Assembly: GCF_001194135.2 (NCBI RefSeq)
Contig: NC_068993.1
Location: forward strand, 8,952,299-8,996,200
From: Octopus bimaculoides
Taxonomy: Eukaryota
Direction: 5' to 3'
Length of the DNA: 43,902 nucleotides
How positions within the stretch are numbered: position 1 is the stretch's first letter; every line of letters begins with the position of its first letter. The translations under genes were made by a program, and so were the position numbers. Of this stretch, positions 11,952-19,863 are shown piece by piece. The notes beneath the pieces were generated by a model, which was not told the origin of the DNA, searched no databases, and saw nothing but the letters and a program-made list of their open reading frames with translations.

Positions 11952-12707
11952 CTAATTTGGTTTCGGTTTTGATTCTGTCTTTTCCAAATTATGTTTACAC
12001 AGTTCATAAAAATGAACTGGTTTCAAATTAAAACAATGTCCTGTATTTTTGCTTTGATCTATCTGTTTATCTGAAGACATCTGTTGTTTGGTGAAATCAG
12101 ATCTTTGATTTTGTGATAAACCTTGTTCATGGCAGAAAGTCGTTGGTTCTAATTTACAGTCTTTTAGTTCTAGTTTTTTAGCTGATGCCAAACTTGTTGC
12201 CAAGTTTACACCATCATTATGTGAAGAACGCAAAGACAAATGATTAATTTGTGTATGGGATTGATTGATATCATTTAAAACAGTCTTGCTAATTTTTGAG
12301 GGTGGTGATAAGCTATTTGATGATAATGATTTTGAATTAATTAGTTCCTCTGACAAAGGATTCAAAGTTTCACATAAGCGCCTTTCATTGATTTGTTTTT
12401 CGTCTTCCTCACCATCAAAATCAGTCGTTTTACTCAAAACCAGATGCTTTTCTCTGCAAGAATTTAAAGATTTCTCTTCACTGTTTTCAACTTTTTCCAC
12501 TTTAGGTTTCTCCATTTGTGCCATAGAACAATCCTCAGGAGTAGATCTTTCAAATTTGGCAGTGAAGAATCTTCTGCAAGCATCACAATAAAGTTTCTTC
12601 TGAACCAATTTCTTGATGTCTTCCTGAATGTCTGCAGGAGTTTCTTTCAGGAACTTCTTCAGATTTTGTTCATCAAAACTTACAAAGGGGCAACCATCAG
12701 TAGCAAC
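11952..12707 (-). CDS. PRIM2-like: PRIM2-like terminal coding exon (VATDGCPF...DACRRFF...KPVHFY...KPN*), third and fourth Fe-S Cys plus a long low-complexity insert
   Basis: Acceptor ttttcttcag|GTT; 756-nt stop-free frame to TAG at 11954-11952; GCPF and AC..FF motifs. Confidence 0.85.
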   Translation of the reverse strand, partial: VATDGCPFVSFDEQNLKKFLKETPADIQEDIKKLVQKKLYCDACRRFFTAKFERSTPEDCSMAQMEKPKVEKVENSEEKSLNSCREKHLVLSKTTDFDGEEDEKQINERRLCETLNPLSEELINSKSLSSNSLSPPSKISKTVLNDINQSHTQINHLSLRSSHNDGVNLATSLASAKKLELKDCKLEPTTFCHEQGLSQNQRSDFTKQQMSSDKQIDQSKNTGHCFNLKPVHFYELCKHNLEKTESKPKPN

Positions 12708-18636: not shown

Positions 18637-19863
18637 TCATCATCATCATCATCATCATCGTTTAACGTCCGCTTTCCANNNNNNNNNNNNNNNNNNNNNN
18701 NNNNNNNNNNNNNNNNNNNNNNNNNNNNNNNNNNNNNNNNNNNNNNNNNNNNNNNNNNNNNNNNNNNNNNNNNNNNNNNNNNNNNNNNNNNNNNNNNNNN
18801 NNNNNNNNNNNNNNNNNNNNNNNNNNNNNNNNNNNNNNNNNNNNNNNNNNNNNNNNNNNNNNNNNNNNNNNNNNNNNNNNNNNNNNNNNNNNNNNNNNNN
18901 NNNNNNNNNNNNNNNNNNNNNNNNNNNNNNNNNNNNNNNNNNNNNNNNNNNNNNNNNNNNNNNNNNNNNNNNNNNNNNNNNNNNNNNNNNNNNNNNNNNN
19001 NNNNNNNNNNNNNNNNNNNNNNNNNNNNNNNNNNNNNNNNNNNNNNNNNNNNNNNNNNNNNNNNNNNNNNNNNNNNNNNNNNNNNNNNNNNNNNNNNCGC
19101 TCAAAATGGTGCATCTCATGTGCCACCCGCACAAGAACCAGTCCAGGGGCACTGGCAACGATCTTACTTGGCTTGCCGGGTCTTCTCACGCACAGCCCAT
19201 TTCCAAAGGTCTCGGTCCGTAGTCATCGCCTCGGTGAGGCCCAATGTACGAAGGTCTTGCCTCACCACCTCAGCCCAGGTCTTCCTGATATATATATATA
19301 TATATATCAATCATCATCTTCATCATTTAGCATCTGCTTTCCATGCTGGAATGGATCAGACGGTTTGACTGGAACTGGCAAGCCGGAGGGCTGCACCAGG
19401 CACCACTCCACTCTGATTTGGCTTGGTTTCTATGGTTGGATGCCCTTCCTAATGCCAACCACTCCAAGAGTGTCATGGGTGCACTTTACGTGTCACTGGC
19501 ACAGGTGCATTCTACGTTTATATATTATGCATGTACATGTGTATACAGGTATACACACAGGTGTACACACACACACATATGTGACAGACAGTCTGATACA
19601 CTTAGAGTCACAAAGGAGGAAATTGTATAAGGATTCAAAGATTCTTACCTAAGAATAAAATGGGATACTTGATCCTTCTTAGTCCCTTCAATGAAGCAAT
19701 CAGAGTCAACTACTAGGCTCAAGTCTTTGACAAGATCAGTCAAAGCCATGAAGTCATCACCAGCACCCAGCACTCGGATGAGAAAGTCCAGGCGTTTGAA
19801 AGAAAATTTCTCCAGCTTTTCCAGGGAAATATTTCCAGAAGGAGGTTTTATATAAAATGACAT
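11952..19863 (-). CDS. PRIM2-like: DNA primase large subunit (PRIM2/PriL)-like gene, divergent. join(complement 19649-19863, 17111-17594, 15941-16099, 14174-14398, 11952-12707) = 1839 nt, 612 aa
   Basis: Five GT-AG exons splice in frame (215+484+159+225+756 nt). Motifs in PriL order: FYIKPP, DQVSHFILR, RIPF, DERI, FPPCM..LH..LR..H.L.H..R, YTLFLK..GL, FW..EY, YNIRHLYGLEG, GCPF, AC..FF. Confidence 0.9.
12785..12928 (+). mobile_element. SINE family B head
   Basis: cccaaccacatggttccaggttcagtccc...gtgagtggatttgg. Confidence 0.8.
13180..13408 (-). mobile_element. SINE family B, internally deleted
   Basis: ggcttctttcagt...aaatccactcacaagg...gaaccatgtgg. Confidence 0.8.
13579..14085 (-). mobile_element. 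SINE-like family C (ggaagggcatccagctgtagaaac central motif, RTE-like cggacgttaaacgat(gat)n tail)
   Basis: (cat)n-cgtttaacgtccgc on +; about 66-bp internal tandem units; more than 10 copies in the window. The central motif resembles the MetaSINE domain as I recall it (not verified). Confidence 0.85.
14174..14398 (-). CDS. PRIM2-like: PRIM2-like coding exon 4 (IRYTLFLKEAGL...YNIRHLYGLEGSRVNYRAHTCSHIQ), second Fe-S Cys
   Basis: Acceptor ttttcttcaatag|ATC and donor CAG|gtatta; 225 nt, phase 0/0; YNIRH..G.EG motif. Confidence 0.92.
14448..14660. mobile_element. TTAA-type (piggyBac-like) MITE
   Basis: ccctttagcatt...aatgctgaaggc|ttaa ends; second copy at 31424. Confidence 0.6.
14985..15370 (-). 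mobile_element. Family C element with three ~66-bp internal units
   Basis: Matches the 13579 copy. Confidence 0.85.
15690..15910 (+). mobile_element. SINE family B 3' half
   Basis: tttgtcccc...gatagaataag...aatgactaaaacaagtaaaag. Confidence 0.75.
15941..16099 (-). CDS. PRIM2-like: PRIM2-like coding exon 3 (...IDAKAKYFPPCMSYLHTALRTKHRLKHHDR), first Fe-S Cys
   Basis: Acceptor ctgtttgtag| (an alternative in-frame AG would start the exon at 16087); donor CGA|gtaaga; FPPCM motif. Confidence 0.9.
16188..16410 (-). mobile_element. Family C element, degenerate
   Basis: (cat)n tail; gatgcctttcc..tgccaaccac. Confidence 0.7.
16580..16964 (+). mobile_element. tRNA-derived SINE, family A, full length
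   Basis: Box A tggcccagtgg, box B gtttcgattcc, caa-type tail; 9-bp TSD acaaccaag (16571-16579, 16965-16973). Confidence 0.9.
17111..17594 (-). CDS. PRIM2-like: PRIM2-like coding exon 2 (MAFCEDAELWRLF...ERIEKLFANLQ)
   Basis: Acceptor atacttag|A completes the split AGA (Arg) codon; donor CAG|gtaaga; 484-nt open frame. Resembles PRIM2 LAYCQSEELRRWF, YKIPF and DERL regions. Confidence 0.9.
17664..18055 (+). mobile_element. SINE family B (tRNA head, CORE-like ttgggcaagt segment, internal TA/TG microsatellite, gagtaaaa tail), full length
   Basis: aaccacatggttc..ggttca head, gtgagtggatttggtagacggaaactgaaagaagc, catggccgcagtcaaatgactgaaac tail; more than 12 copies in the window. Confidence 0.9.
18095..18358 (+). 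mobile_element. Older, degenerate family A-like SINE
   Basis: gttcaattcc box B; ccagccttgtcaca...gctgaatctccc...taagggtaca body. Confidence 0.6.
18634..19270 (-). mobile_element. Family C element spanning a gap
   Basis: Tail before the gap and internal unit after it. Confidence 0.7.
19310..19505 (-). mobile_element. Family C element
   Basis: ggatgcccttcctaatgccaaccactcc. Confidence 0.8.
19649..19863 (-). CDS. PRIM2-like: PRIM2-like coding exon 1 (MSFYIKPPSGNISL...KKDQVSHFILR)
   Basis: Acceptor tttcttacag|ATG and donor AG|gtaaga. Matches the PRIM2 N-terminal FYLQPPSENISL and DHISHFILR motifs. Confidence 0.88.

What the first reader, a model, noticed from the sequence alone, without database searches (positions are those of the whole stretch)
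11952..19863. A second, highly divergent primase large subunit (PriL/PRIM2-like) gene with an intact Fe-S module
Seen: a clean five-exon ORF of 612 aa with four Cys at the PriL 4Fe-4S positions (FPPC, HTC, GCPF, DAC). Residues aligning with the p58C primer-binding surface are kept: HRLKHHDR versus human HHLRHGGR (K for R302, H303 and R306 retained) and RYVYNIRH versus GYSYNIRH (numbering from memory). Known: canonical animal PRIM2 orthologues keep HGGRMQYGLFLKGIG almost unchanged. This protein has HHDRIRYTLFLKEAG, lacks the ~25-aa N-terminus and has a divergent N-domain. Inference: it is probably not the replicative Pol alpha-primase subunit but an uncharacterised paralogue. It might partner a different catalytic primase (PRIM1, PrimPol or a captured viral primase) or act as a stand-alone RNA:DNA-hybrid/5'-triphosphate-binding Fe-S protein.
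Basis: partly seen in the sequence, partly recalled or inferred. Interest (0 to 1): 0.85.

Follow-up and report, generated by a model that had tools for sequence, protein, structure and literature searches.

The report
Ancient second primase large-subunit gene
This octopus gene is a conserved, selected second copy of the DNA primase large subunit that many invertebrates carry beside the normal one; it keeps the iron-sulfur and primer-binding parts but lacks the replisome tether, and I found no published study of it.

Summary
On the minus strand, 11952-19863, five GT-AG exons encode a 612-aa protein identical to Octopus bimaculoides XP_014790914.1 ("uncharacterized protein LOC106884191"). It has the two-domain PriL fold. 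All four [4Fe-4S] cysteines and the p58C residues that hold the primer 5'-triphosphate and template are present. The assembly gap lies in intron 1, inside a SINE-like repeat, and hides no coding exon.

The same genome has a canonical PRIM2 (XP_014779509.1, 519 aa) on another chromosome. That copy is 52% identical to human PRIM2; this gene is only 30% identical to it.

The gene belongs to a distinct "L" clade found beside canonical PRIM2 in molluscs, echinoderms, hemichordates, amphioxus, insects and a tick. The clade has its own conserved intron positions, none of them shared with the octopus canonical gene. It also has its own signature, and dN/dS against O. sinensis is 0.23.

Canonical PRIM2 docks on GINS through an N-terminal tether, and the L clade lacks that segment.

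Most likely it is an alternative regulatory subunit that pairs with the catalytic subunit PRIM1 and primes away from the CMG helicase. This is inferred, not shown. I found no literature on the clade.

The parts
19649..19863 (-). Coding exon 1 (aa 1-72, phase-2 donor). ATG at 19863-19861, directly preceded by an AG acceptor, so a 5' UTR exon lies upstream.
   Evidence: Identical to the RefSeq model. 95.3% nt identity to the O. sinensis exon, with no gaps.
17595..19648 (-). Intron 1, which holds the assembly gap 18679-19097. The gap cuts a SINE-like repeat.
   Evidence: The gap flanks match the two ends of the intact repeat copy at 13580-13875. The exon 1/2 junction is contiguous in homologues and in transcripts.
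17111..17594 (-). Coding exon 2 (aa 72-233): most of the N-terminal domain, including the alpha/beta subdomain (aa 160-192) that in human p58 contacts the catalytic subunit p49.
   Evidence: Subdomain role from PMC5333051.
15941..16099 (-). Coding exon 3 (aa 234-286): linker and start of the Fe-S domain. It holds the first Fe-S ligand C267 (16000-15998) and HRLKHHDR (15964-15941), with H283 and R286 equivalent to human H303 and R306.
14174..14398 (-). Coding exon 4 (aa 287-361). It holds LFLKEAG, the L-clade-only insertion C324-x-H326-x-W328 (14287-14273), YVYNIRH (14254-14234) and the second Fe-S ligand C357 (14188-14186).
11952..12707 (-). Coding exon 5 (aa 362-612 plus stop). It holds Fe-S ligands C367 (12692-12690) and C405 (12578-12576), the disordered tail aa 420-583 (12533-12042) with the short motif FCHEQGLSQ (12137-12111), and the terminal helix with KPVHFY (12029-11970), equivalent to canonical HPNQFF.
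21300..21425 (-). Possible 5' untranslated exon (weak evidence; the end coordinate 21425 is the matched ATG, the start is approximate).
   Evidence: The extra N-terminal residues of the O. vulgaris gene model P0316 (MHFNIQ.FPYSVL) match the window's minus strand from 21425.

Best explanation
The gene encodes a functional, anciently duplicated paralogue of the primase large (regulatory) subunit; I call its clade 'L'.

Shown:
- It is a separate locus from canonical PRIM2.
- It is under purifying selection.
- A cephalopod orthologue is transcribed as a spliced mRNA.
- It folds as a two-domain PriL.
- It keeps the four [4Fe-4S] cysteines and the residues that in human p58C bind the beta/gamma phosphates of the initiating NTP (R306), stack on its base (H303) and contact the template (K314, Y345, Y347, H351).
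- It lacks the N-terminal segment that tethers canonical PRIM2 to GINS.

Inferred:
- Its N-terminal domain still binds the catalytic subunit PRIM1, because the alpha/beta subdomain that contacts p49 is the part of the N-terminal domain best shared with canonical PriL.
- Without the PSF2-docking N-terminus, this alternative primase would not sit at the lagging-strand exit of the CMG helicase. It would act elsewhere or at another time, for example repriming, gap or end fill-in, or a special cell type or stage.
- The clade-specific changes around the nucleotide site probably alter substrate handling. These are H300 to R, G304/G305 replaced, and an inserted C-x-H-x-W next to the template-binding tyrosines.
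For: Separate loci: L gene on CM046613.1, canonical on CM046608.1.

Identities: 30% to the octopus canonical protein, which is 52% identical to human.

Clade: both genes are found together in at least 15 named species of molluscs, echinoderms, hemichordates and amphioxus; L members also occur in six insect orders' worth of named species and a tick. The L clade is monophyletic with NJ bootstrap 81. HMM scores are 477 against 274 bits with cephalopods left out of training.

Introns: L introns at window codons 72 (phase 2), 287 (phase 0) and 362 (phase 0) are shared with the brittle star Amphiura; 72 and 362 are also shared with the mayfly Cloeon. None of the four coincides with the ten introns of the octopus canonical gene.

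Selection: dN/dS 0.23 overall and 0.15 in the N-terminal domain, at dS 0.135.

Transcription: uninterrupted 600-aa ORFs on contigs assembled from three sequencing runs, for a 55%-identical cephalopod orthologue.

Conservation across 101 L sequences: the four Cys in 100-101; R306 equivalent 100; H303 equivalent 99; K314 99; Y347 100; H351 98.

Structure: pLDDT above 85 over most of aa 1-420. The C-terminal domain superposes on human p58C bound to template:primer (5F0Q) at 1.7 A over 173 columns. The N-terminal domain matches 4BPU with TM 0.70.

The alpha/beta subdomain shares 9 of 9 strongly conserved positions with canonical PriL. Its p49-binding role, and the roles of R306, H303, N348 and H351, are from PMC5333051.

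N-terminus: 115 of 122 canonical proteins start M-x-hydrophobic, about 27 residues before the FY..PP motif. In 69 of 74 L proteins the motif sits at residue 2-3. PRIM2 M1/F3 dock in PSF2, and deleting residues 2-7 impairs lagging-strand priming in vitro (PMC10501992).
Against: - No partner was tested. I could not run a complex prediction, and I could not obtain the residue list for the PriS or Pol alpha interfaces.
- The MCM3 contact of PRIM2 (site b) and the Pol alpha C-terminal peptide site may be kept or lost in L. This is unknown.
- L proteins also start M-x-F, like the PSF2-docking M1/F3. Here F3-Y4 align with the folded F28-Y29 of human PRIM2, so this is probably coincidence, but a direct PSF2 contact is not excluded.
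- Transcript evidence is for an orthologue, not for this locus.
- The tree is distance-based with one long branch.
Confidence: 0.5

Rival explanations
1. It is a tissue- or stage-specific replacement of PRIM2 inside the ordinary four-subunit Pol alpha-primase. It would bind both PRIM1 and the POLA1 C-terminal peptide and serve bulk replication in, for example, germline or rapid embryonic cycles.
For: The whole N-terminal domain, including the helical subdomain that binds p180C in human (PMC5333051), is confidently folded and is the most constrained part of the protein (dN/dS 0.15). The core motifs SHFILR, E89/L92 and D222/R224 are shared with canonical PriL.
Against: It lacks the N-terminal GINS tether that is critical for fork priming (PMC10501992). 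The helical subdomains share only 27-33% of consensus residues with canonical PriL. The clade has stayed distinct since before the protostome-deuterostome split, which argues for a different job rather than a spare copy.
Confidence: 0.2
2. It works without a primase catalytic subunit, as a stand-alone Fe-S protein that recognises 5'-triphosphate RNA:DNA junctions or similar nucleic-acid ends, for example as a sensor, a protector or a recruiter through its long tail.
For: The triphosphate- and template-binding residues are better kept than any other surface. There is a clade-specific C-x-H-x-W insertion beside that site. Molluscs and echinoderms carry a long disordered tail with a short conserved motif, which suggests recruitment of other factors.
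Against: The N-terminal domain has no known role other than bridging PriS and Pol alpha, yet it is kept in full and is under the strongest constraint. Arthropod members have almost no tail.
Confidence: 0.15
3. It partners a different archaeo-eukaryotic primase (PrimPol or a virus-derived primase) instead of PRIM1.
For: None directly. It is only compatible with the divergent N-terminal domain.
Against: No viral relative of the protein in IMG/VR by sequence or in BFVD by fold. PrimPol has its own zinc-finger domain for the initiating nucleotide (abstract of PMC5934617). Conserved introns across phyla show a vertically inherited cellular gene.
Confidence: 0.08
4. It is a decaying duplicate or an annotation artefact.
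For: It is divergent from canonical PRIM2, and there is an assembly gap inside the gene.
Against: Intact ORF with identical exon structure in O. sinensis and no indels. dN/dS 0.23. Orthologues across phyla with invariant functional residues. The gap is inside an intronic repeat.
Confidence: 0.02

Closest known systems
Canonical eukaryotic primase large subunit (PRIM2 / p58 / Pri2 / PriL; Pfam PF26466 + PF04104)
   Same: Two-domain architecture and fold. Four [4Fe-4S] cysteines. R306, H303, K314, Y345, Y347 and H351 equivalents. The terminal helix with P-x-x-[FY]-[FY]. The conserved alpha/beta subdomain.
   Different: About 30% identity. No N-terminal GINS-docking segment. R for H300. G304/G305 replaced. 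N/S352 to L and I to Q361. An inserted C-x-H-x-W. Different intron positions. A variable, often very long insert (14-512 aa, against 17-58 in canonical) before the last helix. It coexists with a canonical copy in the same genomes.
PriX of Sulfolobus (a PriL-C-terminal-domain-like third primase subunit in an archaeon)
   Same: It is a precedent: a paralogue of the PriL nucleotide-binding domain that takes over initiation within a primase (abstract of PMC5700102, listed).
   Different: PriX is only the C-terminal-domain-like module, lacks the Fe-S cluster and is archaeal. The octopus protein is a full-length eukaryotic PriL with Fe-S ligands. I made no direct sequence comparison.
PrimPol (the second primase of many eukaryotes)
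   Same: A precedent for a replisome-independent priming activity in animals (PMC10501992 introduction; PMC5934617 abstract).
   Different: Unrelated architecture: a single-chain AEP with a zinc finger. Not homologous to PriL beyond the general role of holding the initiating nucleotide.

Membership tests
Eukaryotic/archaeal primase large subunit (PriL) superfamily | Sequence match to DNA_primase_lrg above the curated threshold | tested here: met
   PF04104: 148 bits against a cut-off of 22.4, E = 4e-43. PF26466 (N-terminal domain) is precomputed for the identical cluster.
Eukaryotic/archaeal primase large subunit (PriL) superfamily | Two-domain fold: a mixed alpha/beta plus helical N-terminal domain and an all-helical C-terminal domain | tested here: met
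   AF2 model with pLDDT above 85 over most of aa 1-420. In the Foldseek PDB search the 39 matches at E <= 0.001 are all PriL chains. 5F0Q rmsd 1.7 A over 173 columns; 4BPU TM 0.70.
Eukaryotic/archaeal primase large subunit (PriL) superfamily | Four cysteines that ligate a [4Fe-4S] cluster | tested here: met
   C267, C357, C367 and C405 align with human C287, C367, C384 and C424. They are kept in 100-101 of 101 L sequences. Actual cluster binding is not testable with these tools.
Eukaryotic/archaeal primase large subunit (PriL) superfamily | Residues that bind the initiating NTP/5'-triphosphate and the template | tested here: met
   R286 (R306), H283 (H303), K294 (K314), Y335/Y337 (Y345/Y347), N338 (N348) and H341 (H351). 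Roles from PMC5333051.
Eukaryotic/archaeal primase large subunit (PriL) superfamily | Forms a heterodimer with the catalytic subunit PriS and enables primer initiation | not testable with these tools
   There is only indirect support: 9 of 9 strongly conserved positions are shared in the p49-binding alpha/beta subdomain.
Canonical replicative PRIM2 orthologue group | Groups with PRIM2 orthologues in a tree or profile comparison | tested here: not met
   It falls in a separate clade, bootstrap 81. L-HMM 477 against canonical HMM 274 bits. The octopus canonical protein scores 253 against 621.
Canonical replicative PRIM2 orthologue group | Is the sole or orthologous PRIM2 locus of the genome | tested here: not met
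   XP_014779509.1 on CM046608.1 is the orthologue, 52% identical to human.
Canonical replicative PRIM2 orthologue group | N-terminal M-x-F segment on a flexible linker that docks in PSF2 of GINS | tested here: not met
   The protein starts at the residue equivalent to human 26-27. 69 of 74 L proteins do the same, while 115 of 122 canonical proteins have the segment (PMC10501992).
Canonical replicative PRIM2 orthologue group | Binds the C-terminal primase-binding motif of POLA1 | not testable with these tools
   The PriL-side residues were not available in the papers I could read, and there is no complex prediction tool.
Canonical replicative PRIM2 orthologue group | Shares gene structure with PRIM2 | tested here: not met
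   None of the 4 L introns coincides with the 10 introns of the octopus canonical gene. The nearest are 4 and 6 codons away.

The most novel reading that the evidence does not exclude
Many invertebrate animals (molluscs, echinoderms, hemichordates, amphioxus, insects, ticks) possess a second, Fe-S-containing primase built from PRIM1 and this L-type large subunit. It would be uncoupled from the CMG helicase and perhaps from Pol alpha, with an altered initiation site (R for H300, plus the C-x-H-x-W insertion). It would date from before the protostome-deuterostome split, and I found no vertebrate member among the sequences I could name. That would be a previously unrecognised priming system in animals.
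Probability: 0.35. Interest if true: 0.85.

Novelty: new variant of a known kind. Interest (0 to 1): 0.66.

Why it matters
Eukaryotic replication textbooks know one PriS-PriL primase, always bound to Pol alpha, plus PrimPol. Here is a second large subunit that is conserved across phyla and under selection. It keeps the Fe-S cluster ligands and the initiation site but has lost the replisome tether. That implies either a second mode of priming in most invertebrate lineages or a new use of the PriL nucleotide-end-binding module.

It also offers a natural variant for the disputed role of the primase Fe-S cluster and its tyrosines. Y345 and Y347 are kept, while H300 and G304/G305 are changed.

The gene is easy to test in oysters, sea urchins, amphioxus or beetles. 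Databases currently label it 'uncharacterized' or 'DNA primase large subunit-like', and in O. sinensis 'DNA primase large subunit'. That last name risks confusing it with the replicative gene.

Tried and rejected
- **Hidden exon in the gap:** rejected.
- **Closing the gap with the newer assembly:** failed. The window is that assembly, and the gap persists.
- **Viral origin or relatives:** none in the IMG/VR pattern scan. None in BFVD by fold at E <= 0.001.
- **Retrogene origin:** not supported as a recent event. The four introns are ancient and shared across phyla. An ancient retroposition followed by intron gain cannot be excluded.
- **Third homologue search, with an 83-sequence L alignment, to name more taxa:** it returned only 30 proteins and one new species, Gigantopelta. 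Absence from vertebrates, nematodes, Drosophila or non-bilaterians cannot be claimed from these data.
- **Residue-level PriS and Pol alpha interface lists:** not in the papers held, and PMC3791718 is not held.
- **Literature on a metazoan PriL paralogue:** seven of the nine searches bear on this, and none gave a relevant paper.
- **Gene structures of the scallop and chiton L genes:** their products are not on record.
- **Long C-terminal tail as a family trait:** rejected. Tail length ranges from 14 to 512 aa, and arthropod members have short ones.
- **Timing of the duplication beyond Bilateria:** unresolved. In the NJ tree the L clade sits outside all sampled canonical sequences, which may be long-branch attraction. 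A choanoflagellate sequence (P0146) scores equally on both profiles.
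Full report
**1. What is in the sequence**

The feature lies on the minus strand. Stop-free segments and splice-site contexts give five exons at plus coordinates 19863-19649, 17594-17111, 16099-15941, 14398-14174 and 12707-11952. 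All introns are GT-AG. The joined CDS is 1839 nt and encodes 612 aa.

The product is identical over its full length to P0318, which is XP_014790914.1, "uncharacterized protein LOC106884191 isoform X1" of Octopus bimaculoides. The window plus flanks is base-for-base identical to GCA_001194135.2 CM046613.1:8961750-8974661. The start ATG is directly preceded by ...ttcttacAG, so an untranslated exon lies upstream. An O. vulgaris gene model suggests it is near 21.4 kb.

**2. The assembly gap**

The gap at 18679-19097 is in intron 1. Its left flank (18637-18678) matches positions 13580-13621 of a SINE-like repeat in intron 4 at 90% identity. Its right flank (19100-19164) matches positions 13811-13875 of the same copy at 94% identity. 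The gap therefore replaces about 189 bp of one repeat copy.

At the protein level the junction HFILR|MAFCED is continuous. This holds in the alignment to human and Xenopus PRIM2, in Argonauta and O. sinensis orthologues, and in uninterrupted ORFs on transcript-sized contigs of another cephalopod. No coding exon is missing. The gap is not closed in the chromosome-level assembly, and the O. sinensis intron 1 also carries 100 N.

**3. It is a PriL**

- Pfam DNA_primase_lrg matches at E = 4e-43.
- The best solved structures by sequence are Xenopus and human PRIM2, aligned from residue 2 to about 420.
- An AlphaFold2 model from a 53-sequence alignment has pLDDT above 85 over most of residues 1-420. 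Residues 420-583 are disordered (pLDDT about 30). A confident terminal helix spans 591-607.
- In the Foldseek PDB search, all 39 matches at E <= 0.001 are PriL chains. The C-terminal domain superposes on human p58C bound to template:primer (5F0Q) with rmsd 1.7 A over 173 columns. The N-terminal domain matches 4BPU with TM 0.70.

**4.

In a 178-sequence alignment, C267, C357, C367 and C405 align with human C287, C367, C384 and C424. HRLKHHDR aligns with HHLRHGGR: H300 becomes R, R302 becomes K, H303 and R306 are kept, and G304/G305 become H/D. YVYNIRH aligns with YSYNIRH. According to PMC5333051:
- H303 stacks on the 5' base.
- N348 contacts the templating base.
- H351 lies at the template interface.

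All of these are present here.

**5. It is a paralogue, and an old one**

A search with a canonical clam PRIM2 (P0105) found canonical PRIM2 in O. vulgaris and Argonauta. Cluster look-up added O. bimaculoides XP_014779509.1 (519 aa) and the O. sinensis protein. The O. bimaculoides canonical gene lies on CM046608.1, a different chromosome. It is 52% identical to human PRIM2, while the window protein is 30% identical to it and 31% to human.

The window protein's own relatives form a different set, and 32 of the 34 hits share its signature. They come from:
- bivalves, gastropods and a chiton;
- brittle star, sea urchins, sea cucumber and starfish;
- amphioxus and a mayfly.

Look-ups of further representatives added two hemichordates, a tick, a stick insect, a firefly, a parasitoid wasp, a whitefly and a mealybug. 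At least 15 named species are shown to carry both genes.

An exhaustive HMMER scan of 1.84 billion representatives gave 1702 hits. About 100 of the best 150 are of this L type. In a neighbour-joining tree the L clade is monophyletic with bootstrap 81/100. Inside it, molluscs, ambulacrarians plus amphioxus, and arthropods group roughly as the species do. Profiles built without cephalopods score the window at 477 bits (L) against 274 (canonical). The octopus canonical protein scores 253 against 621.

**6. Gene structure**

The octopus canonical gene has 11 coding exons. None of its ten introns coincides with the four L introns; the nearest are 4 and 6 codons away.

By contrast, the L introns at window codons 72 (phase 2), 287 (phase 0) and 362 (phase 0) are at the same positions and phases in the brittle star Amphiura. 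Those at 72 and 362 are also shared with the mayfly Cloeon. The L gene structure therefore predates the protostome-deuterostome split and is independent of the canonical one.

How much older the duplication is remains open. The L clade sits outside all sampled canonical sequences in the tree, which may be a long-branch effect. A choanoflagellate protein scores equally on both profiles.

**7. It is functional**

Against the O. sinensis orthologue, all exons align without indels and with the same splice sites. By Nei-Gojobori, dN/dS is 0.23 at dS 0.135. By region it is 0.15 in the N-terminal domain, 0.24 in the C-terminal domain and 0.34 in the tail.

Across 101 L sequences, the four cysteines are kept in 100-101. 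The R306 equivalent is kept in 100, H303 in 99, K314 in 99, Y347 in 100 and H351 in 98.

A 55%-identical cephalopod orthologue is encoded as an uninterrupted ORF on 2.6-3.9 kb contigs assembled from three sequencing runs. These are spliced transcripts.

**8. What distinguishes the clade**

(a) No N-terminal segment. 115 of 122 canonical proteins start M-x-hydrophobic (95 of them M-x-F), about 27 residues before the FY..PP motif. In 69 of 74 L proteins that motif starts at residue 2-3.

(b) Changes around the nucleotide site, with L counts out of 101 and canonical counts out of 75:

| Position (window numbering) | L clade | Canonical |
|---|---|---|
| 280 (human H300) | R in 95 | H in 71 |
| 311 | Y in 97 | F in 69 |
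| 342 (human S352) | L in 88 | N in 52, S in 13 |
| 361 | Q in 83 | I in 71 |

(c) An insertion C-x-H-x-W just before the template-binding tyrosines. W is present in 100 of 101 L sequences, H in 90 and C in 83. The insertion is absent from 74 of 75 canonical proteins.

(d) A variable insert before the terminal helix. Its median is 88 aa and its range 14-512 aa; it is 185 aa here. In canonical proteins it is 17-58 aa. It is long in molluscs and echinoderms and short in arthropods, so it does not define the clade.

**9. Mechanism**

PMC10501992 shows that PRIM2 residues M1 and F3, on a flexible N-terminal linker, dock in PSF2 of GINS. Deleting residues 2-7 markedly lengthens lagging-strand products in a reconstituted human system. 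The yeast equivalent is important for growth. The L clade lacks this segment entirely, so it is unlikely to be positioned on CMG in that way.

PMC5333051 states that the small alpha/beta subdomain of p58N binds p49 and that the helical subdomain binds the Pol alpha C-terminal domain. In my alignment the alpha/beta subdomain (aa 160-192) is the part of the N-terminal domain best shared between the two families: 9 of 9 strongly conserved positions are identical and the consensus is 48% identical. The helical subdomains share 27-33%.

Together with the intact initiation site, this makes an L-PRIM1 heterodimer able to initiate primers, but not tethered to the replisome, the most economical reading. 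I give it about 0.5. The steps 'binds PRIM1', 'has an Fe-S cluster', 'initiates primers' and 'acts off the replisome' are inferences. None was tested.

The rivals are:
- a stage- or tissue-specific substitute within Pol alpha-primase (0.2);
- a stand-alone Fe-S protein that binds nucleic-acid ends (0.15);
- a partner of another primase (0.08);
- a decaying duplicate (0.02, effectively refuted).

**10. Known or new**

Databases already hold the protein, so the gene model is not new. It is listed under names such as 'uncharacterized protein', 'DNA primase large subunit-like', 'PRI2-like' and, in UniProt, 'DNA primase large subunit C-terminal domain-containing protein'.

I ran nine full-text searches in all. 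The seven that bear on this question found no paper describing a second PriL lineage in animals. The library lacks most subscription journals, so this is absence of evidence only. No viral relative exists by sequence or by fold.

I class it as a new variant of a known kind: a distinct, ancient, uncharacterised subfamily of the primase large subunit.

**11. Limits**

- The tree is distance-based.
- Only about a fifth of the L-type clusters could be named, so gains and losses (vertebrates, Diptera, nematodes, non-bilaterians) are not established.
- No complex prediction, expression data for this locus or biochemistry was available.
It was checked against the PDB alignment and against a mammalian representative, to which it is 89% identical.
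- The human Fe-S cysteine numbers are also from memory, and they agree with that sequence.

Noticed in passing
window 41322-41546 and 43027-43506 (+), running off the window end: Exons of an ISWI/SMARCA5-like SNF2 ATPase: an [12 protein letters not shown] motif, and a SNF2-related domain (PF00176, E = 6e-36). The gene is head-to-head with the PriL-like gene, about 21 kb away.
   Followed up: partly
window 13580-13875; also core matches at 18660, 31570 and 43691 (+): A SINE-like interspersed repeat: a (CAT)n run, then GTTTAACGTCCGC..., about 300 bp. It occurs several times, and more diverged copies appear to sit in the other introns of the gene (seen by eye). One copy is cut by the assembly gap.
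   Followed up: partly
window 17594 (exon 2 start) and RefSeq isoform X2 (P0317): RefSeq lists a 540-aa isoform that starts at M73, the first codon of exon 2. It lacks the first 72 residues of the N-terminal domain. An O. sinensis/O. vulgaris 540-aa counterpart exists too.
   Followed up: no
window about 21300-21425 (-): The 34 extra N-terminal residues of the O. vulgaris model P0316 begin with a stretch encoded here (MHFNIQLFPYSVL...). This is probably the 5' untranslated exon of the gene. The sequence is a low-complexity, internally repetitive stretch.
   Followed up: partly
window 12137-12111 (-), aa 552-560 FCHEQGLSQ: There is a short motif C[FY].H[DE].[CF].SQ, 50-63 residues before the C-terminus of the otherwise disordered tail. 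A strict pattern found it in abalone, limpet, a cerithioid snail and oysters, and more loosely in Saccoglossus, and in 0 of 75 canonical proteins. It may be a docking or phosphorylation (SQ) site.
   Followed up: partly
window 14287-14273 (-), aa 324-328 CNHTW: An L-clade-only insertion C-x-H-x-W next to the template-binding tyrosines. W is present in 100/101, H in 90/101 and C in 83/101. Its role is unknown: an extra metal or nucleic-acid contact?
   Followed up: partly
P0146 (Salpingoeca urceolata, EukProt): A choanoflagellate PriL with a mixed signature: HHLKHEGR as in canonical, but YTLFLK and RYRYSIRHLYGLEG as in the L clade. It scores equally on both profiles (262 against 247 bits). It may bear on the age of the duplication.
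   Followed up: partly
window 20210-20491 (+): A 94-aa stop-free segment (…VAKWKKTLKYRDLTVNYHFQPVAFETFGG…) with no Pfam match. It lies between the gene and its presumed 5' exon and may be a transposon remnant.
   Followed up: partly
P0001 / XP_029644035.1 (O. sinensis): The O. sinensis orthologue of this paralogue is named 'DNA primase large subunit isoform X1', while the true canonical gene of that species is named 'DNA primase large subunit-like'. The names appear to be swapped.
   Followed up: no
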